From positions 10,106,001 through 10,170,000 of the forward strand of contig NC_042998.1 in NCBI RefSeq assembly GCF_006345805.1: DNA of 64,000 nucleotides, given 5' to 3'. The stretch is from Octopus sinensis. Taxonomy: Eukaryota. Under the pieces are notes generated by a model that saw nothing but the letters and a program-made list of their open reading frames with translations, was not told the DNA's origin and searched no databases. This document shows positions 1,931-63,811 of this stretch, piece by piece. Made by a program: the position numbers and the translations under genes. Positions within the stretch are counted from its first letter, which is position 1, and the number at the start of each line of letters is the position of its first letter.

Positions 1931-2001
1931 TTAGTCTGATCAGTCACGTGGCCACTTTAAAATCGATAATTGTACTTTGATAATGCTTTAACCCATTCAA
2001 G

Positions 2002-2048
2002 CTAAATAACAACACCAACAACAACTACTACTACTACTACAGCTGCTG

Positions 2049-2095
<47 letters not shown>

Positions 2096-2114
2096 GTTGC
2101 TGCTGCTGCTGCTG

Positions 2115-2170
<56 letters not shown>

Positions 2171-2204
2171 ACTACTACTACTACTGCTGCTACTACAGCT
2201 GCTG

Positions 2205-2272
<68 letters not shown>

Positions 2273-2303
2273 ACTACTACTACTACCACTACTACTGCTG
2301 CTG

Positions 2304-2343
<40 letters not shown>

Positions 2344-2355
2344 AACTACTACTAG

Positions 2356-2386
<31 letters not shown>

Positions 2387-2516
2387 GCTGCTGCTGCTAC
2401 TACTACTACGACTACTAATACTGCTGCTGCTGCTGCTACTACTACTACGACTACTAATACTGCTGCTGCTGCTGCTACTACTACTACGACTACTAATACT
2501 GCTGCTGCTGCTACTA

Positions 2517-2572
<56 letters not shown>

Positions 2573-2573
2573 G
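2002..2573. repeat. Compound (CTA)n/(CTG)n trinucleotide microsatellite
   Basis: Directly visible; includes three copies of a roughly 39-bp higher-order unit at about 2395-2510. Confidence 0.97.
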
Positions 2574-2664
2574 TTTAGAATCCCTAAGCGCAGGAACTAT
2601 TTACCTGTGCAGCAACCTTTTCTTTACACAGTATATCGTTTCATAAGTTTTCTTGGCAAAAGTA

Positions 2665-2810
2665 TAAATTACACAGGCGCAGAAAAAGGTTGTTGGCTGG
2701 GATGTAAGAAGTTTGTTTCACAACCAAGTGGTTTCGAGTTCAGTTCTACAGCGTGGCGTTTTTGGCAAGCATCTTCTACTAGAGCCCCAGGCCGACCAAA
2801 GCCCCAAAAA
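2665..2810 (+). mobile_element. SINE family C, diverged 5' fragment
   Basis: Resembles the family-C head (caaccaagtggtttcgagttcagttc...ggcaagcatcttctactagagccccaggccgacc). Confidence 0.5.
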
Positions 2811-2829
2811 TTCTATATATCTGTCAGTC

Positions 2830-2834
2830 GGTCT

Positions 2835-2872
<38 letters not shown>

Positions 2873-2906
2873 TAATCAATCCATCCATCCATCCATCCAT
2901 CCATCC

Positions 2907-2970
<64 letters not shown>

Positions 2971-3015
2971 GTCTGTCTATCCATCCATCCTTCCATCCAT
3001 CCATACATACATACA
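2830..3015. repeat. Compound tetranucleotide microsatellite (ATCA/ATCC/ATCT/ATAC)
   Basis: Directly visible. Confidence 0.95.
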
Positions 3016-3349
3016 CACACCGATTTCAGTCAATCTGACTTCCAGTTAAACACCAATACCTAAACCAACATTAAAATAAATATCATCTGTTATGCTATTC
3101 TCACGCATTAAAATATCTTTCGATGACTTGCACATAAATTGCTCTTCTTTAGTGGCAAACAGCTTACTTGTTGATCCGTGCTGTTATCTGCAAACCGATA
3201 ATAAATCGTTCCTATTCACGGTGAACAGCGACAATCAAAGCGATGACTTCCATATTTATATGTTCCGACAGATTCGAATTATAAAATGCTTATCGCTGTT
3301 TTGTTTCGAGTAGCATTTTCGTGTTGGAATCTGCCAGTATTTTGTGCCA

Positions 3350-3535
3350 GTCCTCCTCCTCCTCCTCCTCCCCCTCCTCCTCCTCCCCCTCCCTCCTCCT
3401 CTTCCTCCCGCCCTCCTCCTCCTCTTCCCGTCGTCGTCGTCGTTGTTGTTGTTCCTCTTTCTTCTTCTTCTTCTTCTTCTTCTTCTTCTTCTTCTTCTTC
3501 TTCTTCTTCTTCTTCTTTCTTCTTCTTCTTCTTCA
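3350..3535. repeat. Compound (CCT)/(GTC)/(GTT)/(CTT) microsatellite
   Basis: Directly visible. Confidence 0.95.
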
Positions 3536-3537
3536 AT

Positions 3538-3750
3538 AAGGCGGTGAGCTGGCAGAATCGTCAGCAAGCCTGGTAAAATGCTTAGCGGCATTTCGTTTGC
3601 CTTTACGTTCTGAGTTGAAATTCCGCCGAGGTCTACTTTGCCTTTCACCATTTTGGGATCGATAAAATAAGTACCAGCTGAGTAATGGGGCCGATGTAAT
3701 CGACTTACCCCCATCCCTGAAATTGCTGGCCTTGTTCCAAAATTTGAAAG
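3538..3750 (+). mobile_element. SINE family A, diverged monomer
   Basis: Head ggcggtgagctggcagaatcg, core gaggtctactttgcctttcacc; ends about 30 bp before the exon A acceptor. Confidence 0.75.
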
Positions 3751-3781
3751 TATTTCATTGCCTAATTTGTTTTCTCAACAG

Positions 3782-4148
3782 ATGCCCACCTCAAGCCAAG
3801 CATTAATTCTACTCAATGTAGACAATCCGAATCCTTTAGACCAGCATATACCCCAGATCAACCAGTTCCAGTCGTCTGTAAGGAGAAATTCTGACCACAC
3901 AAACCAGCCACTGAATTCTTCTCCAGAGAGTTCTCCATATTGCCTTCATCGGTTATCACCCTCCAAATCAGAATATTTTGGTCCCACCAAATGTAACCCT
4001 ACTTGTTCGGCCGACAATATGCAACCCTCCAAAACTTCTTTATATTCTTCTCTAGAGTTCTTGTATCAGCGTGAGCCCTCGACTGCTATTCAGAAACATG
4101 ATCCGACAAAAGCATCATTGCGAATCAGTAACACAAGCTCTTTGTCAG
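3782..4148 (+). CDS. Exon A of a spliced uncharacterized gene; Ser/Pro/Asn-rich region MPTSSQ...SSLS
   Basis: Acceptor tttctcaacag|ATG at 3781/3782, open frame for 367 nt, donor tcag|gtaagt at 4148/4149 (phase 1) matching the phase of the exon at 8815. Upstream exons were not identified. Confidence 0.6.
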
Positions 4149-4518
4149 GTAAGTTGGAAATATCTAAAGGTAAGTTTGAGAGAACAAGTATTTCTGTTCT
4201 GGAAAGGCGTGTTTTTGCCATCTACAATGGACTTTTCATTAGCATTTTTGGGAACCAAATTTCTATTGATTTTTCATTTAGTAAGTGAAAACTTCTTGAT
4301 ATATGTAGACAATAAAAAACAATTTGTTAAAAGAAGTTGCTAGATAACAATCCAGCATTCTTGTTCTTTTTTGAAAAAGTTCAAGGCTGTATAGAACATA
4401 TTCTAAATGTGAAAACAATTTGAGCCGAAATTGAATCTGTAGTTCATCTATTGATTTACACACACACGCATCAGTTTGATTTAGAAAAGAACTTGAAATA
4501 ACGTTAATTCTATATCTA

Positions 4519-4748
4519 TTTCTTTACTACCCACAAGGGGCTAAACATAGAGGGGACAAACAAAGGCAGACAAAGGGATTAAGTCGATTACATCGATCCC
4601 AGTGCGAAACTGGTACTTAATTTATCGACCCTAAAAGGATGAAAGGCAAAGTCGACCTCGGCGGAATTTGAACTCAGAACGTAAGAGCAGACGAAATACG
4701 GCTACGCATTTCGCCCGGCGTGCTAACGGTTCTGCCAGCTCGCCGCAC
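4519..4748 (-). mobile_element. SINE family A monomer
   Basis: Full reverse-complement match to the family-A head, core and tail. Confidence 0.88.
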
Positions 4749-4772
4749 TTGCTAGACTCATATGTTCTCTCT

Positions 4773-5192
4773 ATACTCTTTTACTTGTTTCAGTCATTTG
4801 ACTGCGGCCATGCTGGAGCACCGCCTTTAGTCGAGCAAATCGACCCCGAGACTTATTCTTTGTAAGCTCAGTACATATTCTATCGGTCGATTTTGCCGAA
4901 CCGCTAAGTGACGGGGACGTAAACACACCAGCATCGGTTGTCAAGCAATGCTAGGGGGACAAACACACACAAACACACACACACACACACATACATACGC
5001 ACACACACATATATATATATACATATATACGACAGGCTTCTTTCAGTCTCCGTCTACCAAATCCACTCACAAGGCATTGGTCGGCCCGGGGCTATAGCAG
5101 AAGACACTTGCCCAAGATGCCACGCAGTGGGACTGAACCCGGAACCATGTGGTTGGTTAGCAAGCTACTTACCACACAGCCACTCCTGCGCT
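4773..5192 (-). mobile_element. SINE family C with internal (CA)/(TA) microsatellite
   Basis: tRNA-like head (taggcgcaggagtggctgtgtggtaag), CORE-like ttgggcaagtgtctt, (gagtaaaa)-type tail; several copies in the window. Confidence 0.88.
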
Positions 5193-5829
5193 TATGGGTT
5201 ACAAATTATCTAAATATTTTAGAGTATAGCTAAAAATATATTCTTGACTGATGTGTTTGAGTGGAATTTTGCAGGTGGAAACTGTGCAGAAGCTCTTTAT
5301 ATGAACCTTTCCACAGTCATGAAATTGAAACAAATAGAGGAATGAAATAATGGAATAAAATACTTGGAGTCTCAGCCGCTTGTATGTAATTCATTCCATC
5401 TTCGTAGTTGACGTTCGTTTATACATCGGATCACTTTGGGAAACATTGCAATGTCAGATAAACCTGAAAGAAGTTTATCACTGCATAACTACATTCGTGG
5501 CGAATTCCTGAGAAAACAAACAGGACGTGATTAATGTGCTTAATTGACAGTTTAATATGGCATAAAACCATTCGTATTTCGGCTTGAGAGAAGAAAGGTG
5601 CAACTGTAAATTGGATAAATGATGACGTTTGCGCAGCAAACAAAAAATGAATATGTTCAATTACCAGCAGCTGTTCGTTGCTATTTTCTTCAACCACATA
5701 TCGATGTTTGCAAATTAGGTTAAATCTATAAAAGAAAGTATATTTAGCGTTGCACATGCAGGATCTATGTTTTCTTCCTACAATTTACACACTTGCTAAA
5801 TTAAATAAGACCAAAGATCTTATATAGAA

Positions 5830-6231
5830 CTAGCAGTATCGCCCGGCGTTGCTAGGGTTTGTAAGGGAAATAACTATATAAGCATTTTTAGAGAGTTATA
5901 GCCAAAAAATAGCAAAAAAATGCATTAAAAATGGAAAAAAGATGATGGTAAATTTTTTTTTAAATCGTTGACTCGTTGTAGACATTTTTAGAGAGTTACT
6001 TCCCTTATATAATAGCGAAAAAATGCATTAAAATGGAAAAAAATTATGGTAATTTTTTTTGTTAAATCGTAGACTCATCGTAGACGCGCGCTAATACCCA
6101 GAAGGGCTCGATATGAATCACGACTATAAGATACCCGGTTTTGGTTACACTGCACCGCAAAATGTGGGAGTAATTAGGAATCTAAATCGTAGGAGACAGA
6201 CAGCACACAACTTCACTTTTATATATAAAGA
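5830..6231 (-). mobile_element. Non-autonomous Helitron H1 with internal duplication
   Basis: TC...CTAG termini between A and T, hairpin present, internal segment duplicated relative to the copy at 503. Confidence 0.85.
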
Positions 6232-6564
6232 TTATAACGTAGAATTAGAGGTGTGGGTTCTTTGTGGTGGAGTGGCGAGCAAAATATCCTGCGGTAATTA
6301 GTCACGTTTCTTTTTATTCTGAGACCAAATCCCTCTAAATCAACTTTACCTCTTATCCTTCTAGAATGGTTTTTAACCCTTAAACAGAAGACATTACCAA
6401 TTGAAGTTTCAAAGATTGTATATGAACACTGCCGTCGTCAAAAGAAAGTGAATATTTGACAGCACTTTTCGATTATGAGATTGCGAATTTCATTGTGCGA
6501 GACACTAACAATTCCTATTGCTTTTGTACTTATTTAAAGTGAAAATGAATGTAAAGATTATGTA

Positions 6565-6926
6565 AGGTATACTAGCCATCTCAATATGGCTAACCACTAA
6601 GGGTGGGTGTTACTGCAGCTTGCTTGCATACAGTTTTTCGAGATCAGTGACGAAAAGTTACTGGAAAAACGATATAAAGATTTGCATTGGGACCCCCTTC
6701 ATCGACAACCGGTGACTGCCGTACGCTGAAGACAGGCAAATACCTAGAAACTGCAGTCCGTGCGTGTCACCTAGGTTGACGAGGGAGGGATGACCTCCCT
6801 TTGCAAATGCCATAAGGGCAGAGAAAGTGTGCCTAAAGCCAGCAGGAGACGATGATCTCCTGGGGCTAAAAGCTACAGTAACACCCACCCTTAGTGGTTA
6901 GCCATATTGAGATGGCTAGTATACCT
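6565..6926. mobile_element. MITE with roughly 57-bp terminal inverted repeats (Tc1/mariner-type TA site)
   Basis: TA|AGGTATACTAGCCATCTCAATATGGCTAACCACTAAGGGTGGGTGTTAC and its inverse ending GTATACCT|TA. Related TIR pieces at about 26455-26515 and 54988-55044. Confidence 0.8.
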
Positions 6927-7249
6927 TACTAGCAGTTACTGTTTACATCTCGTTCAGAGATTTATTATTGAATGTAAAAATTACCTTTCTGAAAAAGATA
7001 CATTTTTTCGTTTTTTGCCTGTTAAGCACACACATTCATGCAACTCATTCCCACCGTTAAGTGTTAAGGAACAACAGTAATGTCACTGTTACAGGTTCTC
7101 GGTTGGTCAGTCACTGATTCATTATATTTCTTACGCCGATGGTCATAGAGAATAGTCTGTACAACTCGGACAGAATAAATCCTTTTTTATTGGAAAGCAT
7201 GGGTTTTCGTGTTTTCTCGCCGATCTTTTACATCTTTCACCAATACACT

Positions 7250-7440
7250 TTGGATAAGAGGCATACACACACGGTATCAAGCTTCCGCACAGTTTCCATC
7301 TACTAAATTCCACCCACAAGACACTGGCTATCTTGCGTTTATGGTAAAAGACACTTGTTTGGGGTGCTGTGCAGTGGAATTGAATCCTGAACAATGTGGT
7401 TGCAAGCCAAGCACCTTAGCCATACATCCATATCTACGAC
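7250..7440 (-). mobile_element. SINE family C, diverged 5' half
   Basis: Degenerate match: tccgcacagtttccatctactaaattcc...aagacacttg...aatcctgaaacaatgtggttgcaag. Confidence 0.5.
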
Positions 7441-7750
7441 CATGCACAACTAATGTTCTTATATGAGTAGCATATTACATAGCATCTTAATACGTATTTC
7501 TCGAAACATAAGGCTTTCATGTTTAGTCAAATAAACACCAACATTATGATGAGTCACTCAAGAAACCGTGATTAATTTATCATTCCCAGATTTTGGCTTC
7601 AACTCCGTCGCTATTTACCTTTTGAGATTGAAGTTAATGTCACGGCAGTACAATTTGTTTTTTCCAAATATATCTGACGTTTGATATCGAAGAAAGAAAT
7701 CAGTATATATCTGAAGAACTGCAGTAAGTTGACAGAAATGGTTCAGCAAT

Positions 7751-8350
7751 AAGGTGGCGAGCTGGCAGAAACGTTAGCACGCTGGGCGAAATGCGTAGCG
7801 GTATTTCGTCTGTCGTTACGTTCTGAGTTCAATTTCCGCCGGGGTCGACTTTGCCTTTCATCCTCTCGGGGTCGATAAATAAAGTACCAGTTACGCACTG
7901 GGGTCGATGTAATCGACTTAATACCTATGTCTGTCCTTGTTTGTCCCCTCTGTGTGTAGCCCCTTGTGGGTAATAAAGAAATAGGTATTTCGTCTGCCGT
8001 TACGTTCTGAGTTCGAATTCCGCCGAGGTCGACTTTCCCTTTCATCCTTTCGGGGTCGATTAAATAAGTACCATTTACACATTGGGGTCGATATAATCGA
8101 ATTAATCCGTTTGTCTGTTCTTGTTTGTCCCCTCTGTGTTTAGCCCCTTGTGTGTAGTAAAGAAATAGGTATTTCGTCTGCCGCTACGTTCTGAGTTCGA
8201 ATTCCGCCGAGGTTAACATTGCCTTTCATCCTTTCGGGGTCGATTAAATAAGTACCAGTTACGCACTGGGGTCGATGTAATCGACTTAATCCGTTTGTCT
8301 GTCCTTATTTGTTCCATCTGTGTGTAGACCCTTGTGGGCTGTAAAGAAAT
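7751..8350 (+). mobile_element. SINE family A, head plus three tandem units
   Basis: Same architecture as 1039-1639; degenerate TSD agaaatggttcagca / agaaacggtcaagca. Confidence 0.88.
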
Positions 8351-8399
8351 AAGAAACGGTCAAGCATTGGATTAAATATTTTACATTATTTAAATCTGT

Positions 8400-8526
8400 T
8401 CCGAGGTCGACTTTGTCTTTCAGCCTTTCGGGGTCGATAAATTAAGTAACAGTTGCGTACTGAGTCGGTCTAATCGACTGGCCCCTTCCCCAAAAAATTT
8501 CTGGTCTTGTGCCTGGAGTAGAAAAG
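8400..8526 (+). mobile_element. 5'-truncated SINE A with second tail type
   Basis: 15-bp TSD attatttaaatctgt at 8385-8399 and 8527-8541. Confidence 0.8.
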
Positions 8527-8814
8527 ATTATTTAAATCTGTCCCTCTGTGTTCTGATTCTGAATATTGCAAGATCAACTTTTCCTTTCATCCTTTCGGTA
8601 TTGATAACACACGTACCAATAGTATACTAGAATTGATTTTTTAACTGTTCGCTTCGTTTAAACAACTAGTCTTGTGTTTGATTACAGAGTAAACTTTATG
8701 TTTGTGATAGATTTTGATAATTTAAGATTATACAACTAAATAATGAGCTGTATTGTTTAGTTTTGATCTCATATTAAAGAATTATTGATGAAAAACTTGA
8801 ATCTTCTTTTTCAG

Positions 8815-9490
8815 GCAGAAACATATTTGATCCAAAACTTTGTTGCTCCAGGACAGATGATAAAAATCTAATTTATTTGATGCCAAAGACAGCTCAACTC
8901 CATTATTTCACCGCTGGTCGATATTTTTCCCGTCTGCCGCGATCCTTTACTGAGAATTCATTCTATGAACAACGTTCTTACAATCAAAGTCAAATGAACT
9001 TGACAAGTGATCAAAATCCCGTAGAAGTAGTAAAACCTGTTCTTGAAATTCGCAAATCTCAACAATTTCACAAGCCATTACAGTCACTGAATGCTCTGCA
9101 CAATAATATGACATTGATGTCTCTAAATACAGACAGTTATCAACAGTCTTCAATTGATTCTCTCTCTTCTTATGAAGAAAATGCTAATAATTTAATCCAG
9201 CGCTTGCGTAGTCTTGGTTTTCGACCTTACGGAACTTGGAGTTCCGATAATAGAGATGAAAAACAGACGATAGCGAAAGATTTTACCGCCAACGAATCAA
9301 TAATTCCGATTTCATGTAGAGATGCTGCTGAAAATGATATAATCTCCGAAAAGATTTATTCTTTAAATGGAAACAAAGTTGGTCCAAGGTTTGTTCATTC
9401 CAGTCTTACATTTTCTTCATTAAACAATAACGAAGAGACTAAGTATGCTTCATTTCTTGATACTTCTTTGATTGTGGTCTTAAAAGCAAG
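8815..9490 (+). CDS. Exon B of the same gene; Ser/Asn/Gln-rich region (G)RNIFDPKLCC...
   Basis: Acceptor tcttttttcag|GC (phase 1), open through ORF 8877-9500. Two phase-2 donors: ccaag|gtttgt (9388) and gcaag|gtgtaa (9490); either joins exon C in frame. Confidence 0.65.
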
Positions 9491-9924
9491 GTGTAACTAG
9501 GTTATATTTTAATGGAAGGCAGGTATCAATTGGTAGTGTTTAATTATTTATAATAATTGATTTTCTAAAAGTTTTTATTAAAGGGTTCCTAAACTTGTAA
9601 TTTTTGATTCTATCTTAAGTCAAGTAAGTTGACCAACTCTCTTCACTTAGTATTCCACTTACTATGAAAAAGCATAAACATCAGAATGGCATTAACAAAA
9701 GAAATACCACGAAGAGTTTCTGCCCACGTCCCCTACGTTAGGAGCAAAAAATCTAGGCGTAGTAAATACGCAAACTCATGTTACTTGGTTTCATAAATAT
9801 ACAAATTATTAAAGTAACTTCCTCTTGGATAACTTCGTGAAAGTTAAGTGCCATATTAAATTAATGAATGCCGAATACCTCCATATTGCGTCTATATTGG
9901 CGTTCCTCTTTTTTTGTTTTTTAG

Positions 9925-10525
9925 ATGCTTGCAAGTGAAAATTGCAACCGGACTTTCTGTGAGTGAAGAAGAAATTAAAAAACAACTAATGTGGTACGAT
10001 GAGAATGGTATCGAACAAGAGAAAGTAGAAAAACTTGTATCTGATATAAAATCGAAACTGCGTAGTAAAAAGACGAAAGCTCCGACAATCCGTATGCGTA
10101 AGACGCTTCCAGAGTCACAGCCGTTGACCATTTGCTTTGCTTGTGACTCTGACCTTCAGATAACTCATGAAGATATTAAACGTGAATTAGAATCTCAGTA
10201 CCCCGAGGTTATGCTACTCAGTCTTCGATTCGATCCCGTATCAGTGGCTGTTGGTAACTCTCATACGAAAAATAGATGGGTTGTTTGTGTAAGTAACAAT
10301 GAAGACTTCCAGTCGTTAGTAAAAGGTGGCGTAACTATTGCAGGAAGTGATCGAATCACAGTGAAACCGTTCGATGCTGTAATGTTAGAGGAACACAACG
10401 CTTATAAACTCCACCAATATGTGAAGGAAGCGAAAGCTATGATTGCGAGATCGAAAGATGAACGCACGAAACAAGCAAAGAAACTAAAGAACAAAAGAAT
10501 AAAGTTTAAAATAAAAGTCACGTGA
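9925..10525 (+). CDS. Terminal exon C; globular domain resembling the RRM-type region of LINE ORF1p, then a basic tail
   Basis: Strong acceptor ttttttgttttttag|A (phase 2), an intact frame of about 200 codons to TGA at 10523-10525, and AATAAA 41 nt later. The domain call rests on the pattern ICF..ITHEDIK..L..YP..NRWVVCV..LVKGGVTI.G..ITVKPFD..EE..Y and is an inference. Confidence 0.8.
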
Positions 10526-10565
10526 ATATAGAACGGTGAGTGAAATCAAATTACGAATGACCTTT

Positions 10566-10571
10566 AATAAA
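10566..10571 (+). terminator. Candidate polyadenylation signal AATAAA
   Basis: Canonical hexamer shortly after the exon C stop, with T-rich sequence downstream. Confidence 0.45.
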
Positions 10572-11094
10572 AACTTTGCTTTTGAAGCGTTTTTTGTGAA
10601 ATTACAAAATTTCAGTAAAAAGCTGGCTTAAAAAATTAATTCTGGAAGGTTAAAAATTCCATTTTTCTAAAGCCTTTGGGTTAAATCTTTCGAACACTGC
10701 ACGAATCAATTGTATTGTTCTCTTGTTACCTTTAGTGAGTCGCAAGCTACCATAATCTCTTTATTTTGATTATGATGTTATATTGTTGTCTCTGGCTTCG
10801 TTTACTCTCGTAGGTAACCTGAATTTTTGTCCTATAATGTAATTTGTATTCCCAAGTAATAAGAATTGAATATATACTACTGCGACAGAATGAACTTGAA
10901 AATATTGTAGTATTTCTGGTACTTAATATAGTTGTGTATCTAAAGTTGGTACACTAAATAATAAAGTTAGGTAGATTTCTTCACCTTATCTTGACCGTTT
11001 TCTTACGATGATAAATGACCATGAGGTCATTTATCATTATTATCGATATCAATATGTGGTGATATTGTCAGGTAATATAACATACTGGTTTATA

Positions 11095-11235
11095 AGGCGG
11101 TGGGCTGGCAGAATCATTAGCACGCCAGGCAAAATGCTTTGTGGCATTTCGTCCGTCTTTACGTTCAAATTCAGCCGAGGTCGACTTTGCCTTTCATTGC
11201 TTTCAGAGTCGATAAAATGAGTGCCAGTTGTGTTC
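11095..11235 (+). mobile_element. SINE family A, partial diverged copy
   Basis: Head and core match; 3' end missing. Confidence 0.65.
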
Positions 11236-11554
11236 TGTCATGGAAATAATTGGCTTAGCACGTCCTTCGACTTTACCTAGACACACAATAACTATATTTT
11301 CAGAAGAAGGATGTCGTCACATTGATACTTTTCTCAAGAGTATTTGCGGTAGTAGCGAAATGATATGACTTTTATCAAGAATAGAAAGTTCGTTGCGAAA
11401 TATTTTCTACCCTTGTCCCTACCTCGTCTATGCCTAAAAATTACATTATATGTGATAATTATTACCTTCTTGTCAGTCTAGTTGTAGAACGAAACCATAT
11501 TCAAAATTATTTGACATTTTTACTTAAATTTGGTAGATCTCTGACGTAGTTTAC

Positions 11555-18708: not shown

Positions 18709-18832
18709 TTTTAATATAATACGATATTCTTTAAGGTTCCTGATATCACGAAGGTTAGTCTACACTTACAGCTCAACGCTTTAAGACTTAACATAAAAAC
18801 TCCTTTATGTCCGTCATTACGAGGAGAATAAC

Positions 18833-19241
18833 AAGGCGGCGAGATGGCAGAAACGTTAGCACACCGGGTGAAATGCGTAGCCGTATTTCGTCTGCTTTAC
18901 GTTCTGAGTTCAAATTCCTTCCGCCGAGGTCGACTTTGCTTTTCATCCTTTCGGGGTCGATTAAATAAGTACTAGTTACGCACTGGGGTCGATATAATCG
19001 ACTTAATCAGTTTGCCTGTCCTTGTTTGTCCTCTCTGTGTTTAGCCCCTTGTTGGTAGTAAAGAAATAGGTATTTCGTCTGTCTTTAAGTTCTGAGTTCA
19101 AATTCCGCCGAGGTCAACTTTACCTTTCATTCTTTCGGGGTCGATAAATTAAGTACTAGTTGCGTACTGGGATCGATCTAATCGACTGCCTCCCCCTCCT
19201 CGAAAATTTCGGGCTTTGTGCCTAGACAAGAAAAGATTATA
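18833..19241 (+). mobile_element. SINE family A dimer ending in the second tail type
   Basis: 10-bp TSD aggagaataa at 18822-18831 and 19242-19251. Confidence 0.88.
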
Positions 19242-26121: not shown

Positions 26122-26540
26122 ATATATTTATGAGAAACTTAACGATACAGTTAACTCAAAACAGAATACCATTTGAGTTTTTATGGAGAAGCAAAAGGCT
26201 GTCGTGAGCAACTTTAATGTCTCCATGCTACCACATTCTGAACCTCATAAAACATCTGTTGCAATATGAAATATTCCCTTCGTCTTTTTATACATTTGAT
26301 ACTAATTTTTTCTTCAAAATCTTTCTTCCAGAGTTTCGATAAATACAGTAGTAATTAAGCAATAATAAATCTTTGAACGAGGTATAAACAGTAGCTGCAC
26401 GACAATGTGAAGTATATTTGCCACTGAAATGTGGCAAGATGTTCTCCTGGGGCTACAAGCTACAGTAGCATCCGCCCTTAGTGGTTAGCCACATTTAAGT
26501 GACAAATATACTTCACATTATAGTAGTAATTGTTTCTGAT

Positions 26541-47689: not shown

Positions 47690-48900
47690 AGGTCTGTATT
47701 TTTTGTGTTGATGGCAGTGAGGTTGATAACGGTGTATTGGGGTTGTGGTGCTGATGCTGGATGTGTAAGTGTAGTAGGTGTGCATGCAGGTGGTGCATGT
47801 CTGTGGTGCAGTGGTGTGCTGACGAAGGGTTCTTTTCTTTTCTTTTTTTGTGGAGAGCTCCTTCCAGTCGGTGTTGGTAGCAATCGGGCCTGCATCTGAC
47901 GTAGGGTAATCCTTAGTGCTTTGGGTGTCCTTTATTGCACTGGCGTTGGTGGGTGTGCAGTCTGGATGTGCACCCTCCCCCGTGGGCACCTCCTTAGTTC
48001 TTATTGCTGGGGTTGGGCTTGCTGTGGATTTTGCTGGTTCATCTGCGCGTAGCCCGGCTTTGGCCTGACCCTCAGGTGCTGAGGAGGCCTGTGTCTTGGT
48101 TTATGATGGTCCTCACTGGGATCTGCTGTGGTTGTTCGTTTGGTGGAGGGTGGCCCATTACTGTGGATTCCCGTGAGTAGGTGACCTTGATAAGCACCTT
48201 CTTCCCACATTTGTAACATCTGGGTCTGCGTCCCTCACCACAACGCGCATAGCTATTCCATCTGGAAGTTTGATTTGGTCGGGTAGAGCTTCAAGATCTT
48301 GTTGCGTGGCTTGAATTATAAATTCTATGCCTTGACCCCATCAGTTTTGCTTGTGGAGTTTGGTAACTCGTAGGATATTTATGTTACTTTCCAGGTCCAA
48401 CGGGATAGCCACCACAACCCATACTACGTTTATCTCTGGGGGCACCTTCCCAATTTTTATTTTTGATGTTCGTCTTCCTAAATAAGTTGGTAGTAGCACT
48501 AGTTCGGTAGTTTTTAGTGTCACTGTAGAGTGTTTTTTGGCTTCCTCTTCTGAAGCCAATCTTACCTCCACAGTGCCAATTTTATTTTACTCCTTTCCAC
48601 ATAGGTCCTTCTCCACATGGGCTGAAGGAATTATTCGATTAGTTCTTTGAGGCGCGTTCTATTTTCATGTTTTTAAAGAGAGAGTTTTGTATGTGATCGT
48701 TTTACGCAAGGTGTGTTGCGTGATTTCATAGGGGGGAGGAGGTAGACTAAAATTGTAGTAGGCATTTGTATTTTTTCAATTCTTCCATACTAAGGTTTAA
48801 CTTCTCTTGATTAACTTTTGCCGCCGACGCGAGCCCTCGACTATCACCATTCATGGTTTTCGGGTATTTATCATTAGAGGGACTGGTATTGGTGGCGTTA
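47690..48900 (-). mobile_element. Decayed L1/Tx1-type ORF1 (RRM-like region plus degenerate CCHC knuckle), no ORF2 seen
   Basis: Pieces VEVRLASEEEAKKHS..LLPTYLGRRTSKIKIGKVPPEI and, across a frameshift, EGRRPRCYKCGKKVLIKVTY (from C-x2-C-x3-GH-x4-C). Confidence 0.6.
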
Positions 48901-54722: not shown

Positions 54723-55110
54723 TCTTTATATATAAAAGTGAAGTTGTGTGTCTGTCTCCTACGATTTAGATTCCTAACTACTCCCACATTTTGCGGTAAC
54801 CAAAAGCAAGTATCTTATAGTCGTGATTCATATCGAGCCCTTCTGGGTATTAGCGCGCGTCTACAACGAGTCTACGATTAAAAAAAAATTACCATCATTT
54901 TTTCCCATTTTTAATGCATTTTTTTTGCTATTATATAAGGGAAGTAACTCTCTAAAAATGTATTATTAAATCTCAGAACGTAAAAATCTACAGTAACACC
55001 CCCCCTTTGTGGTTAGCCATATTGAGATGGCTATTATACTTTACATCTCTAAAAATGCTTATATAGTTATTTCCCTTACAAACCCGAGCAACGCCGGGCG
55101 ATACTGCTAG
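54723..55110 (+). mobile_element. Non-autonomous Helitron H1 carrying an 85-bp foreign insert
   Basis: A|TC...CTAG|T; insert 54961-55045 between repeats of tctctaaaaatg. Confidence 0.85.
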
Positions 55111-56730: not shown

Positions 56731-57266
56731 CAGGGTGTCCCAAAAAAATGTATACACACCTTAAATAATTGTAAATTTGGGGTTTATTATAATTCGAATA
56801 ATTTTCAACATGTAAAAGAATTTACAAATATCATTCTATTGTCTTGTTATCGCATGTTCTCAAACTGATGTCCGTTCTGCTCCAGACACTGCTGACAACG
56901 CGAAGCGATGGAATGGCACACATCATGGAACAATTCCCTTGGGATATTCGTACATTCATGTTCAATGGTTGCCCTCAATTGAACGACTGTTGCAGGTTTC
57001 TGTGCGTAGACTTTGTCCTTTAGGTATCCCCATAAAAAGAAGTCTAGTGGTGTGAGGTCTGGTGAACGTGGAGGGTATTCGACAAAACCTATCCGTCCAA
57101 TCCACCTGTTTGGCAAGATCCCATCAAGAAAGGATCTAACATCGCGATGGTAGTGTGGAGGTGCCCCATCTTGCTGGAAATAAAACTCTTCCTGTTCAAA
57201 GTCCTCTCTAATGCTTGGCATGACAGACTGTTGCAGAAAGTGTATACATTTGTTTGGGACACCCTG
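56731..57266 (-). mobile_element. Internally deleted Tc1/mariner element in the SULT intron
   Basis: TA|CAGGGTGTCCCAAA TIR and inverse TTTGGGACACCCTG|TA; encodes FQQDGAPPH...PPRSPDLTPLDFFLWGYLK. Confidence 0.93.
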
Positions 57267-57622
57267 TATATATATATGTAAAAGAAAAGACATATGCCCT
57301 ATCTCTGAGAAAGGGTTTTGCTTGAAACATCGAAGTTTCTATCTCTCAAAGGACATATGAACAGCTATAATACGAATTCATTCACATGCTTGACTGGCAT
57401 TTTATTTTATGTACATCAGAAACATGAAAGGTAAAGTTGATTTCGATGGGACTTAAACAGAAATCTTAAAGAGCAGTAACAAAATACCAGACGTTTTATT
57501 TAATGCTCTAACGATTCTACAAATCCCTCGCTGAATCCAAACTTAACGAAATATTTGAAATCTATCAATTCGTCCAGTTGAGCTCACACACATACAAATA
57601 CATAGTCATATTATTTACTTAC

Positions 57623-60641: not shown

Positions 60642-62214
60642 GATTGCCACAACAGTTGAATCCTCATCCTAGGATATAGAGACCTCAGTTTCAGAGTGGG
60701 CATTCGCACATGGATCCGTTCCTGAGCTGAAAGAGAAACAGAGACCACGAAACAACATCTTAAAGAGGCTGATGATCTGCTCGTTAAAAATGTCGACTAT
60801 ATTGATAGATATTGAATTCTCTCAACCAGGTGTCTTGGATCGGAAAATTCATTTCATTGGCTGTCGATACTCCTTAGCCCTGAAGATTGGCATTTTTCCA
60901 TTGCTATTTGTTTAGATGCCAGATATATAATTTCATACGATACTAGTGTAGTGAAGTCTTAGGTAACTGAGGATATGACGATCCTACAAACTTAATGGCA
61001 GTAGGATACTAAGAAGCACGGAGGGCAATGATATTGTTAAATGGGCTCAGTCAAAAATTTGAGTTCCCTATCATTCTGGAGCCAGTAAATTTTCTCATGG
61101 CACAGTCGATTGCAAAGAAGACTCGGGGGTCACAGCAATACTAGTCGAATTAATGAAATCCCGAAAATACCATGATTTACTCGGTCACTATTACTACTAT
61201 CACCTTTTGAGACTAGTGGGAACTGTGGTTCTTCCACTTCTAAGTTTAAATCAGAATTGGATGTGAAGTTATCGGAGGTGTTATGTGAGCCCTAACAAGC
61301 TGCTGGATTTCGTCAAAGGCTTTCACTTGTAATTATGGAAGACCATCCAGCAAGTTCCCTTTGCCATTCTGCTGCCATAGTATGGCATATCACACGACGA
61401 AGGTACAAAAAGGGAAGTGTTAAGTATCCTAGACGTGAATAGAATTCCAGGTAATAATCTTTAATCTGAAATGCTTAGTTTAGGAAATATTTCGGATTTC
61501 AGATTCTGTTTTTCTTTTCAGTAAAAGGAGGGTATTAAGGCATGTATAAAGTGGGAGACCTGTGTCTTACCCATTTACATTTCATAATACAGCTTATACT
61601 GATACAACGATCATATGATACAAATTTGGCGCCAGACCACGATATTTCGCACGACATTTAACAATTCTACTTTGGGAACAGTTCGCTTTTCATGAAGAGA
61701 AAATGCGCCTGTTAGACTTACACAGCTTCATGATACAACTACACGAAACTAGCTTTTACGCACTCCCCCCATTCTATGTTCAGCTACGACCTCCTTCCCT
61801 TGTTTAATCCTTTCCTTCTCCAAAGCATTTTCATGATTCTGTCCTAAACGTCCTTGCTTGTTTTCAGACTTTTAGCTAGTTCTTAGTTCTTGTTCACACG
61901 TTCTGAGTAATACAAAGCTTTCTTATCGTGTCTTAAATTACTCTGGTAGTTGGAAAAAGTGGGAGTGTGTATTATACACATGACGTCTGGGCACCAGGGA
62001 AATATGTCCTGTGTCTCACATGTGAATACACAGGACAGGCAAAAGGGTTGAAAACATTTTTGGGGCACTTTCAGGAATTTTCAGTTCGTGGTGTTTCATT
62101 CATCTAAAAAGATATATACGAAAAAAAAGGGTGGGATGGTGGAATTTTCGGGTTTCGGAATTTCAAATAAAGAAATATCTACTTCATAATAGAAGAAGAA
62201 TGTGTGCGAATATA

Positions 62215-62254
62215 CGCACGCACACACACACACACGCGCACACACACACACGCG

Positions 62255-62307
<53 letters not shown>

Positions 62308-62495
62308 ACACACACGCACACACACGCACGCACACACACACGCACACACACACGCACACACACACACACACACACGCACACACACGCACACACACACGCA
62401 CACACACGCACACACACACACACGCACACACACACACGCACACACACACACACGCACACACACACACACGCACACACACACACACACACACACAT
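62215..62495. repeat. (CA)n/(CACG) microsatellite
   Basis: Directly visible. Confidence 0.96.
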
Positions 62496-62940
62496 TTCTA
62501 TAAACTCGATGGTTTTGAAACTCTTTCGAACTGAATTAAACATATCTGTATACTTTTTCCCCTTTTGTTCTTAGACTTTTCGAATTGGCGTCATTTGAAT
62601 TGAATACGTAAACAACATTAACAAAAACTGAATGAAAAACATTTGTATTGTGTGAATTAGTCTTAAATTCAGCATAACACCCGCATTCTTCTTTCTCTTA
62701 TATATATGATGTATATGTATATTTGTATGCATATGTGTGTGCGTGTGTGTGCGTGCGTGTGTATGTAAGTTTGTATGTATGTATGTATGCATGTGTGTGT
62801 GAGTGTGAGAGTGTATATGTATGTATGAATGTATGTATGTTTAGTCAGGAAAAGGAAGTTAGATCCCACGGTCTTATGAAACTCCAAACTGAAAATCTGG
62901 CAGCATCTAGGTCAGATCAGAATGATTGATGATTACAAAT

Positions 62941-63178
62941 TATCATCATCATCATCATCATCATTATCATCATCATCATCATCATTTGGAGTAGTAGTAG
63001 TAGTAGTGGTAGTGGTAGTAGTAGTAGTAGTAATAGTAGTAGTAGCAGTAGTAGTAGTGGCAGTAGTAGTAGTAATAGTAGTAGTAGTAGTAGTAGTGGC
63101 AGTAGTAGTAGTAGTAGTAGTAGTAGTTGTAGTAGTAGTAGTATTAGTAGTAGTAGTAGTAGCAGTAGTAGTAGTGGC

Positions 63179-63213
<35 letters not shown>

Positions 63214-63295
63214 CAGTAGTAGTAGTGGCAATAGTAGTAGTAGTAGTAGCAGTAGTAGTAGTGGCAGTAGTAGTAGTAGTAGTTGTTGTTGTAGT

Positions 63296-63356
<61 letters not shown>

Positions 63357-63372
63357 TAGTAGTAGTAGTTGT
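62941..63372. repeat. (CAT)n followed by a long (TAG)n microsatellite
   Basis: Directly visible. Confidence 0.96.
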
Positions 63373-63811
63373 TTTACATTGTTCTTGTTTCGTCCCCATG
63401 TCAGTCTTGGCAGACCTATGTATGATTAATCATATTATGATATTCCATCAGTTCTACGTGGTTTTATCTAACTAGTATTATATATCGTCCAAATGTGTTC
63501 TTCCTTTGGGTAAGAACACTGGAGTGCGTCGAATCTTTTCTACTCTAGGCACAAGGCCAGAAGTTTTTTTTGGGGAGGGGCCCAGTCGATTAGATCGACC
63601 CCAGTACGCAACTGGTACTTAATTTATCGACCCCAGGAGGCTCTGTTGTTGACTGGAAGTTAGAAGTTGAAACAACCAACAGGGACAGGAAAGCCGTGGA
63701 CGAAGAGCAAACATTACACGGGAAGAGGAAGGACGCAATCGTTAAAATTACACAAATAATAGGTATCAAAATAGAAAAGAGCAGGATATACTAAAGATAT
63801 TCATTTATTTA

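What the first reader, a model, noticed from the sequence alone, without database searches (positions are those of the whole stretch)
3782..10525. Spliced gene whose last exon resembles a domesticated LINE ORF1p RRM-type domain
Seen: three phase-compatible exons give an intact ORF of about 513-547 aa in a region where the recognisable TE-coding fragments are broken. Exon C has a strong acceptor and a nearby AATAAA, but no ORF2, zinc knuckle, A-tail or TSD. Its pattern (LTICF..ITHEDIKREL..YP; NRWVVCVSNNEDFQSLVKGGVTIAG..ITVKPFD) suggests an RRM-like fold of the kind in L1/Tx1 ORF1 proteins. It loosely parallels the decayed ORF1 at 47690-48900 (VEVRLASEEEAKKH..LLPTY). Established: ORF1-derived host genes exist in mammals (L1TD1). 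Inference: this is a host gene that fused a long disordered N-terminus to a retroelement-derived RNA-binding domain with a basic tail, possibly an uncharacterised mollusc RNA-binding or TE-control factor.
Basis: partly seen in the sequence, partly recalled or inferred. Interest (0 to 1): 0.7.

Follow-up and report, generated by a model that had tools for sequence, protein, structure and literature searches.

The report
Octopus C19orf81-family (DUF4732) gene
The three exons form a real, conserved octopus gene: the ortholog of an uncharacterised animal-wide family (human C19orf81, Pfam DUF4732) whose C-terminal domain is predicted to fold like an RNA-recognition motif; nothing shows that it came from a LINE retrotransposon.

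Summary
Exons 3782-4148, 8815-9388 and 9925-10525 (+) splice in phase into an intact 513-aa ORF. A 513-aa "Hypothetical predicted protein" annotated in Octopus vulgaris is 509/513 identical and has the same residues at both junctions. A decapodiform transcript-length contig and full-length proteins from bivalves and gastropods are colinear with it. They share the invariant N-terminus MPTSSQ, a mid "RL..LGFR" helix and the C-terminal domain. Exon C scores above Pfam's cut-off for PF15876 (DUF4732), the family of vertebrate C19orf81, which also occurs in echinoderms. Against a second octopus species the exons are 92.5% identical and the introns about 85%; dN/dS is 0.16 for exon C. The 9490 donor (547-aa form) is not conserved.

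It is a host gene. The N-terminal 340 residues are predicted disordered. The C-terminal domain is predicted with high confidence as beta-alpha-beta-beta-alpha-beta, and its structural matches are mainly RRMs, all weak. It is flanked by basic stretches. The LINE ORF1p origin is not supported. L1 ORF1p is one weak RRM hit among many, and there is no sequence or profile similarity to ORF1p or to the decayed ORF at 47.7-48.9 kb. The family spans both bilaterian branches, and the window holds one copy. This is an ordinary member of a known but functionally uncharacterised family.

The parts
3782..4148 (+). Coding exon A (aa 1-122 plus 1 nt). It starts with the family's invariant MPTSSQALIL. A pyrimidine-rich tract plus CAG directly precedes the ATG, so an upstream 5'UTR exon is likely (inference).
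   Evidence: MPTSSQ is invariant in 17 full-length mollusc proteins. Identical in O. vulgaris P0101 apart from one substitution.
4149..8814 (+). Intron 1 (GT..AG, phase 1). It is filled with SINE-like repeats and a lineage-specific MITE-like insertion.
   Evidence: The acceptor position is conserved in the decapodiform genomic contig L001.
8815..9388 (+). Coding exon B (aa 123-314). It is predicted disordered and carries two short conserved motifs: PVLEIRKSQQF.KPLQSL, conserved in the two cephalopod sequences compared, and the helix LIQRLRSLGFRP, shared across molluscs.
   Evidence: 92.6% identity against about 85% in introns; one in-frame 9-nt indel; dN/dS 0.52.
9389..9924 (+). Intron 2 (phase 2).
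   Evidence: 9389-9490 is 78% identical and the 9490 donor is changed in the ortholog; the annotated O. vulgaris protein uses ...VGPR|CLQV...
9925..10525 (+). Coding exon C (aa 314-513 plus stop): an upstream helix, the DUF4732 domain, a long C-terminal helix and a basic tail.
   Evidence: (dN/dS 0.158).
10070..10387 (+). DUF4732 (PF15876) match, aa 363-468. It contains the predicted RRM-like core (beta1 382-388, alpha1 395-405, beta2 411-417, beta3 429-436, alpha2 439-448, short beta4 strands). Family-invariant residues are H395 and W432; near-invariant are P376, P380, G449 and D464.
   Evidence: (38.9 bits against cut-off 27).
10566..10571 (+). AATAAA poly(A) signal 41 nt after the stop.
   Evidence: Conserved in O. 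vulgaris. Its function is inferred.

Best explanation
This is the octopus ortholog of the bilaterian C19orf81/DUF4732 gene family. It has three coding exons and is a single-copy host gene encoding a 513-aa protein.

Shown:
- The gene model and its conservation.
- Purifying selection on the exons.
- Family membership.

Predicted:
- About 340 N-terminal residues are intrinsically disordered. They carry three short conserved motifs: the invariant N-terminus MPTSSQALIL, PVLEIRKSQQF.KPLQSL, and the amphipathic helix LIQRLRSLGFR.
- The compact C-terminal module has a non-canonical RRM-like fold.
- A basic segment (KSKLRSKKTKAPTIRMRK) precedes that module. A long helix ending in a lysine-rich tail follows it.

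Inferred mechanism (about 0.35 on its own): the RRM-like module and its basic flanks bind RNA or another nucleic acid. The conserved linear motifs in the disordered part recruit partner proteins, so the protein acts as an RNA-binding adaptor. It may act in germ cells, because human C19orf81 is listed as a marker gene of undifferentiated spermatogonia.

The domain is an old animal domain, not a recent capture from a LINE.
For: Gene model:
- The spliced ORF is intact and in phase.
- O. vulgaris annotates a 513-aa protein that is 509/513 identical, with identical junction residues and Pfam PF15876, at a locus about 97% identical in DNA.
- The decapodiform contig L003 (2069 nt, transcript-length) encodes a colinear 571-aa protein. 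The decapodiform genomic contig L001 carries the homologues of exons B and C about 9 kb apart, with a splice acceptor at the same place at the start of exon B.

Selection:
- Exons are 92.5% identical and introns about 85% against the octopus ortholog L002.
- dN/dS is 0.158 for exon C (0.135 in the domain) and 0.52 for exon B.

Family:
- Pfam DUF4732 scores 38.9 bits against a cut-off of 27.
- An exhaustive HMMER scan finds 71 cluster representatives (one, P0065, looks like a chance match). They include proteins named C19orf81 homolog in bat, rodents, frogs and chimaera, plus sea urchin, sea cucumber and many molluscs.
- 27 of 47 domain sequences hit DUF4732 and no other domain family.
- The N-terminal MPTSSQ and the LGFR motif are shared across molluscs.

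Fold:
- AF2 gives pLDDT 87.9 with beta-alpha-beta-beta-alpha-beta topology.
- Foldseek returns mainly RRMs at probability 0.9-1.0.
- The full-length model shows a disordered N-terminus.
- The flanks are basic.

Expression hint: human C19ORF81 is listed among scRNA-seq marker genes of undifferentiated spermatogonia, together with PIWIL4, C19ORF84 and NANOS2/3 (PMC13003925).
Against: - No RNA-seq junction reads or expression data from this octopus were available. No octopus transcript contig was found in the protein collection.
- All Foldseek E-values are weak (0.008 or worse; none at or below 0.001).
- The canonical RNP1 and RNP2 motifs of RNA-binding RRMs are not recognisable in beta3 (KNRWVVCV) or beta1 (LTICFA). 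The domain could therefore bind protein rather than RNA.
- No member of the family has a tested function. The only vertebrate phenotype found is a listing of mouse 1700008O03Rik among bone-mineral-density hits (PMC7822523), which does not point to RNA biology.
- The germline hint comes from human data, not from a mollusc.
Confidence: 0.85

Rival explanations
1. One reading: the last exon is a domesticated LINE (L1/Tx1-type) ORF1p RRM domain, fused in molluscs to a disordered host N-terminus.
For: The predicted fold is RRM-like. Human L1 ORF1p RRM structures are among the Foldseek hits (2ldy rank 5, E 0.02; 2w7a rank 18, E 0.039). A helix precedes the domain, as a coiled coil precedes the RRM in ORF1p. 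ORF1p RRMs also lack canonical RNP motifs (general knowledge).
Against: - Cellular RRMs score as well or better (Prp24 E 0.008; U1A and Mip6 RRM3 reach TM up to 0.72).
- Neither the peptide nor the family profile matches ORF1p chains in the PDB or Pfam ORF1p, RRM or zinc-knuckle models. This held across 64 family members.
- After the RRM-like core comes one long helix, not an ORF1p-type C-terminal domain.
- The domain family occurs in vertebrates, echinoderms and molluscs. Any capture would therefore predate the bilaterian radiation and could not be a mollusc event.
- The N-terminal architecture is shared by all mollusc classes sampled.
- The window holds a single copy, with no similarity to its decayed ORF at 47.7-48.9 kb.
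Confidence: 0.04
2. The RRM-like module is a protein-protein interaction or dimerisation domain (a pseudo-RRM). The protein would then be a scaffold that does not bind RNA directly.
For: No RNP1/RNP2 consensus is visible in beta1 or beta3 (sequence). The long helix that starts right after the last strand (residues 463-512) could lie over the sheet, as in xRRM/La-type domains; these also appear among the hits (4eyt, 4erd, 2vod). Many non-canonical RRMs bind proteins (general knowledge).
Against: Strongly basic segments lie directly on both sides of the core (pI about 10.2). The invariant W432 on beta3 and the conserved F on beta1 could still stack on bases.
Confidence: 0.3
3. It is an active or recently dead transposon ORF, or an unexpressed pseudogene that merely keeps open frames.
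For: The surrounding sequence is repeat-rich. No octopus transcript contig was found.
Against: The window holds one copy. Orthologous, colinear loci exist in O. vulgaris and in a more distant octopus. Exons are more conserved than introns, and dN/dS is 0.16. Indels in exon B are in frame. Decapodiform contigs of transcript length exist in at least 11 near-identical versions.
Confidence: 0.02

Closest known systems
Vertebrate C19orf81 (mouse 1700008O03Rik), the proteins named under Pfam PF15876 (DUF4732)
   Same: The C-terminal domain is homologous: it exceeds the Pfam gathering score, phmmer gives E 1e-4 to 1e-9 to named C19orf81 homologs, and it shares H, W, P..P, G and D signature residues. 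Both are functionally uncharacterised.
   Different: Vertebrate proteins are about 200-230 aa and consist almost only of the domain. They lack the MPTSSQ N-terminus and the roughly 340-residue disordered region with the LGFR helix seen in molluscs.
Octopus vulgaris 'Hypothetical predicted protein' (P0101; GCA_951406725.2, OX597815.1) and the mollusc long-form homologs (Lottia LOTGIDRAFT_232758, Saccostrea LOC134281694, Dreissena LOC127849811 and others)
   Same: P0101 has the same length (513 aa), is 99% identical and has the same exon junction residues. The other molluscs share the N-terminal MPTSSQALIL, the RL..LGFR helix and the C-terminal DUF4732 domain.
   Different: Bivalves and gastropods carry an extra conserved G[YF].G.L.[YF]D...W motif near residue 90-110. 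It is not recognisable in the two cephalopod sequences.
Canonical RRM domains (U1A, Prp24, eIF4B)
   Same: The predicted beta-alpha-beta-beta-alpha-beta topology and size match. These are the best structural hits.
   Different: There is no Pfam RRM_1 match and no RNP1/RNP2 consensus. Foldseek E-values are only 0.008-0.08, with sequence identity 9-21% among the RRM hits.
LINE-1 ORF1p RRM (PDB 2w7a, 2ldy) and the ORF1p-derived host gene L1TD1
   Same: All share an RRM-type fold without canonical RNP motifs, with a helix N-terminal to the domain.
   Different: There is no sequence or profile similarity, no ORF1p-type C-terminal domain and no Pfam ORF1p match. The structural hit is no better than for cellular RRMs, and the family spans deuterostomes and molluscs rather than one lineage.

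Membership tests
Pfam PF15876 DUF4732 / C19orf81 family | Score above Pfam's curated gathering threshold | tested here: met
   38.9 bits for exon C and 36.6 bits for the 513-aa protein, against a cut-off of 27; profile positions 39-149 of 159 are matched.
Pfam PF15876 DUF4732 / C19orf81 family | Significant homology to proteins named C19orf81 homolog | tested here: met
   phmmer against 1.84 billion representatives finds Callorhinchus (E 1e-9), frog (2.6e-7; 7.3e-4), bat (1.4e-5) and rodent (5.8e-4) proteins named C19orf81 homolog.
Pfam PF15876 DUF4732 / C19orf81 family | Family signature residues conserved | tested here: met
   H395 and W432 are invariant. P376, P380, G449 and D464 are at least 90% conserved in 47 sequences, and all are present in the window protein.
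Mollusc long-form DUF4732 proteins | Invariant N-terminus MPTSSQ, a mid RL..LGFR helix and a C-terminal domain | tested here: met
   All three are present and colinear. The helix is predicted at residues 240-255.
Mollusc long-form DUF4732 proteins | G[YF].G.L.[YF]D...W motif in the N-terminal third | tested here: not met
   Present in bivalves and gastropods but not recognisable in the window protein or in the decapodiform P0004. It seems to be lost or diverged in cephalopods.
LINE-1/Tx1-type ORF1p (Pfam L1 ORF1p models) | Sequence or profile similarity to ORF1p | tested here: not met
   No ORF1p model at E up to 10 for the peptide, and none at E up to 0.01 for 64 family members. No ORF1p chain in the PDB at E up to 10, with either the single sequence or the 47-sequence profile.
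LINE-1/Tx1-type ORF1p (Pfam L1 ORF1p models) | Coiled coil, then RRM, then ORF1p C-terminal domain | tested here: not met
   One helix (343-363) precedes the RRM-like core, and a single long helix (463-512) follows it. No alpha/beta C-terminal domain is predicted.
LINE-1/Tx1-type ORF1p (Pfam L1 ORF1p models) | Structural match specifically closer to the ORF1p RRM than to cellular RRMs | tested here: not met
   2ldy has E 0.02 and 2w7a E 0.039 with TM 0.58. Prp24 has E 0.008, U1A reaches TM 0.6 and Mip6 RRM3 TM 0.72.
LINE-1/Tx1-type ORF1p (Pfam L1 ORF1p models) | Retroelement context: adjacent ORF2, multiple copies, A-tail or TSD | tested here: not met
   Single copy in the window by tblastn and by profile search. 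The orthologous syntenic locus in O. vulgaris has the same introns. Whole-genome copy number was not tested.
Canonical RRM (RRM_1) | beta-alpha-beta-beta-alpha-beta fold | tested here: met
   AF2 secondary-structure order at pLDDT 87.9. RRMs dominate the Foldseek hits. This is a prediction only.
Canonical RRM (RRM_1) | Pfam RRM_1 match and RNP1/RNP2 motifs | tested here: not met
   No RRM_1 hit. Beta3 KNRWVVCV and beta1 LTICFA do not fit the RNP1 or RNP2 consensus (read from the sequence).
Canonical RRM (RRM_1) | RNA binding | not testable with these tools
   This needs EMSA or CLIP.

The most novel reading that the evidence does not exclude
The DUF4732/C19orf81 family could be an ancient, unrecognised class of germline RNA-binding adaptors. 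It would use a non-canonical RRM and be linked to transposon or piRNA control. The mollusc long form would keep ancestral docking motifs (MPTSSQ, LGFR) that vertebrates lost. The only support is the predicted fold, the basic flanks, and the listing of human C19ORF81 beside PIWIL4, C19ORF84 and NANOS2/3 as a marker of undifferentiated spermatogonia. An even older origin of the domain from a retroelement ORF1 RRM cannot be formally excluded, but no evidence supports it.
Probability: 0.1. Interest if true: 0.6.

Novelty: already known. Interest (0 to 1): 0.2.

Why it matters
It matters little as a discovery. The gene is already annotated, as a hypothetical protein carrying PF15876, in the sister species O. 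vulgaris. The domain family is in Pfam.

What this analysis adds:
- The attractive "domesticated ORF1p" story has no support.
- The 513-aa isoform is the conserved one.
- The uncharacterised C19orf81/DUF4732 domain is predicted to be a non-canonical RRM-like fold with basic flanks.
- Molluscs keep a long form with an invariant MPTSSQ N-terminus and an LGFR helix.

These points give concrete handles, namely domain boundaries, invariant H395 and W432, and candidate docking motifs. They could help anyone who wants to work out the function of an orphan gene family that in humans marks undifferentiated spermatogonia.

Tried and rejected
- Alternative donor at 9490 (547-aa form): rejected. That segment is intron-like in conservation, the donor is not conserved, and the O. 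vulgaris annotation uses 9388.
- Similarity between exon C and the "decayed ORF1" at 47690-48900: tblastn with word size 2 gave a best E of 1.6, and the family profile at maximum sensitivity gave E 2.9 or worse. Both are noise. Its ORFs have no Pfam hit, so I could not even confirm that it is an ORF1.
- Sequence searches of the PDB with the peptide and with the family profile found nothing meaningful.
- An Rfam scan of 3000-11500 found nothing.
- Literature: no paper mentions DUF4732. C19orf81 and 1700008O03Rik appear only in gene lists.
I reached the locus through the O. vulgaris protein P0101 instead.
- The first word-indexed search with exon C alone missed the annotated O. vulgaris protein. 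The full-length query found it.
- The fold search against viral predicted structures gave only weak RRM and J-domain-protein matches and adds nothing.

Full report
**1. Observation**

- ATG lies at 3782 and donor CAG|GTAAGT at 4148/4149.
- Acceptor TTCTTTTTCAG|G lies at 8815 and donor CCAAG|GTTTGT at 9388/9389.
- Acceptor TTTTTGTTTTTTAG|A lies at 9925, the stop at 10523-10525, and AATAAA at 10566-10571.
- Exon lengths of 367, 574 and 601 nt are phase-compatible and give a 513-aa ORF. The alternative donor at 9490 gives 547 aa.
- The three exon ORFs are the only non-repetitive stop-free stretches of 170 codons or more in the 64-kb window. Block-wise shuffles give 0.18 such stretches per window.

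**2. The gene is real and conserved**

A full-length protein search returned P0101. It is a 513-aa "Hypothetical predicted protein [Octopus vulgaris]" from GCA_951406725.2, chromosome OX597815.1. It is 509/513 identical, has no gaps and has the same residues across both junctions (...SSLSG|RNIF......VGPR|CLQV...). Pfam PF15876 is precomputed for it. The O. vulgaris locus (L004) is colinear with the window at about 97% DNA identity, so the window comes from a very close relative.

A more distant octopus contig (L002, Logan SRR11869391) aligns at 84% overall.
- Exon B is 92.6% identical and exon C 92.5%. The introns and the 3' flank are 84-86% identical.
- Segment 9389-9490 is only 78% identical, and its donor is altered. 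This supports the 513-aa form and rejects the 547-aa form.
- Nei-Gojobori dN/dS is 0.158 for exon C (0.135 in the domain) and 0.52 for exon B. The only indel in exon B is an in-frame 9-nt one.

Decapodiform cephalopods give further support.
- At least 11 near-identical contigs of transcript length (about 2.1 kb) encode a 571-aa protein, P0004, that is colinear with all three exons.
- The decapodiform genomic contig L001 carries the homologues of exons B and C about 9 kb apart. A splice acceptor sits at the same place at the start of exon B (TTTCAG|AAGAGG... before the VW.PR.SCS motif), and a GT follows the exon B homologue.

**3. What it is**

Exon C scores 38.9 bits (E 1.2e-9) against Pfam PF15876, DUF4732; the gathering score is 27. 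An exhaustive HMMER scan of 1.84 billion representatives found 71 at E 0.001 or better, of which one (P0065) looks like a chance match. The named ones fall into three groups.
- "Putative uncharacterized protein C19orf81 homolog" in bat, rodents, frogs and Callorhinchus.
- Uncharacterised proteins of sea urchin (Diadema) and sea cucumber (Apostichopus).
- Uncharacterised proteins of many molluscs: Lottia, Patella, Haliotis, Batillaria, Nucella, Lymnaea, Saccostrea, Pinctada, Mytilus, Dreissena, Potamilus, several pectinids, Tegillarca, Mactra and Sepia pharaonis.

Of 47 aligned domain sequences, 27 hit DUF4732 (best E 9e-92). None hit RRM_1, an L1 ORF1p model or a zinc knuckle. The family is therefore bilaterian-wide.

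An alignment of 17 full-length mollusc proteins shows the following.
- An invariant N-terminus M-P-T-S-S-Q. The window has MPTSSQALILL; echinoderms start MPISSS.
- A shared RL..LGFR motif (window LIQRLRSLGFRP).
- The C-terminal domain, with invariant W432 and near-invariant R372, P376, H395, P418, G449, D464 and E470.
- A further motif, G[YF].G.L.[YF]D...W, in bivalves and gastropods that is not recognisable in the two cephalopod sequences.

The long disordered N-terminus is therefore an old mollusc feature, not a cephalopod fusion.

**4. Structure**

AlphaFold2 on the exon C peptide with 47 homologs gave mean pLDDT 87.9.
- Elements are helix 14-47, beta 68-73, alpha 81-91, beta 97-103, beta 116-122, alpha 125-134, short strands, then one long helix 149-197. 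In protein numbering, add 314.
- This is a ferredoxin-like, RRM-type topology.

Foldseek against the PDB returned mainly RRMs, at probability 0.9-1.0 but with weak E-values; none was at or below 0.001.
- Prp24 has E 0.008 and eIF4B 0.016. U1A has 0.02 with TM 0.6. Mip6 RRM3 reaches TM 0.72 at rmsd 2.5.
- Human L1 ORF1p is at rank 5 (2ldy, E 0.02) and rank 18 (2w7a, E 0.039, TM 0.58).

The viral library gave the same kind of weak RRM hits.

The full-length model has pLDDT below 50 over most of residues 1-340. The exceptions are the LGFR helix (240-255, pLDDT 60-71) and a short N-terminal helix. The C-terminal domain has pLDDT about 90.

The segments flanking the core are basic: pI is 10.2 for 341-380 and 10.25 for 466-513. 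The core itself is acidic, at pI 4.9.

Read from the sequence, beta1 (LTICFA) and beta3 (KNRWVVCV) do not fit the RNP2 or RNP1 consensus.

**5. The ORF1p hypothesis**

The retroelement origin is not, for five reasons.
- ORF1p is not singled out structurally.
- There is no sequence or profile similarity to any ORF1p chain or Pfam model.
- No ORF1p-type C-terminal domain follows the core.
- The window holds one copy.
- The family occurs in vertebrates, echinoderms and molluscs, which rules out a mollusc-specific domestication.

The proposed parallel with the decayed ORF at 47690-48900 is noise. That ORF has no Pfam match.

**6. How it most likely works**

Gene structure, conservation and family membership are shown. 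The disordered N-terminus with short conserved motifs, and the RRM-like module with basic flanks, are predicted.

The mechanism is inferred. The module plus its flanks binds RNA, and the linear motifs recruit partners, so the protein acts as an adaptor. I put this at about 0.35. The main rival, at about 0.3, is a pseudo-RRM that binds protein.

No family member has a tested function. In the literature the genes appear only in lists.
- Human C19ORF81 is listed among scRNA-seq markers of undifferentiated spermatogonia, together with PIWIL4, C19ORF84 and NANOS2/3 (PMC13003925). An antibody against it was used in PMC6274646.
- Mouse 1700008O03Rik is listed among bone-mineral-density hits (PMC7822523).

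**7. Verdict**

This is a real, ordinary host gene. It is already annotated in a sister species and belongs to a known but uncharacterised Pfam family. The domesticated-ORF1p reading is not supported. Interest is low. What remains of interest is that DUF4732/C19orf81 is an orphan, predicted RRM-like family with a possible germline role.

Noticed in passing
window 6562-6929 (insertion extends to about 6976): A MITE-like element lies in intron 1, with 60-nt terminal inverted repeats that are 98% complementary. The insertion (element plus about 47 nt) is flanked by a roughly 14-nt near-duplicate, GAATGTAAAGATTA / GAATGTAAAAATTA. It is absent from the orthologous site in O. vulgaris (L004 near 12769) and from L002, so it is recent in the window's lineage. 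Related inverted-repeat ends lie at window 54983-55044 and 26438-26511 and at L004 8892-9355.
   Followed up: partly
window 7750-8530; also 1040-1640, 4512-4750, 18830-19240: SINE-like repeat units (ggcgagctggcagaa...gtcgatgtaatcgac...) occur as a short tandem cluster in intron 1. The window has about one more unit than O. vulgaris: its blocks break at 7983/8168.
   Followed up: no
Its identity as a LINE ORF1 could not be confirmed.
   Followed up: partly
window 56847-57293 (- strand): A 148-aa ORF contains ...FQQDGAPPHY...PPRSPDLTPLDFFLWGYLK..., which looks like the C-terminal part of a mariner/Tc1-type DDE transposase. The Pfam DDE_3 match is weak (E 0.1, below the cut-off).
   Followed up: partly
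window 2000-3540 and 62000-63430: Long microsatellite or low-complexity tracts (CTT/CTG-type and TG/CA-type) create most of the window's long spurious ORFs.
   Followed up: no
related proteins P0017 and P0100 (Batillaria attramentaria BaRGS_00013935 and BaRGS_00013933); P0016 and P0027 (Saccostrea cucullata): Some molluscs carry two DUF4732 genes. In Batillaria the locus tags are two apart on the same contig, which suggests tandem paralogs: one long form starting MPTSSQ and one short form. No second copy is present in the octopus window.
   Followed up: no
P0046, P0051 (echinoderm homologs) compared with window 3782-3800: Echinoderm DUF4732 proteins start MPISSS(R), which resembles the invariant mollusc MPTSSQ. 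Vertebrate C19orf81 proteins lack this start. The N-terminal motif may therefore be ancestral to bilaterians; what it does is unknown.
   Followed up: no
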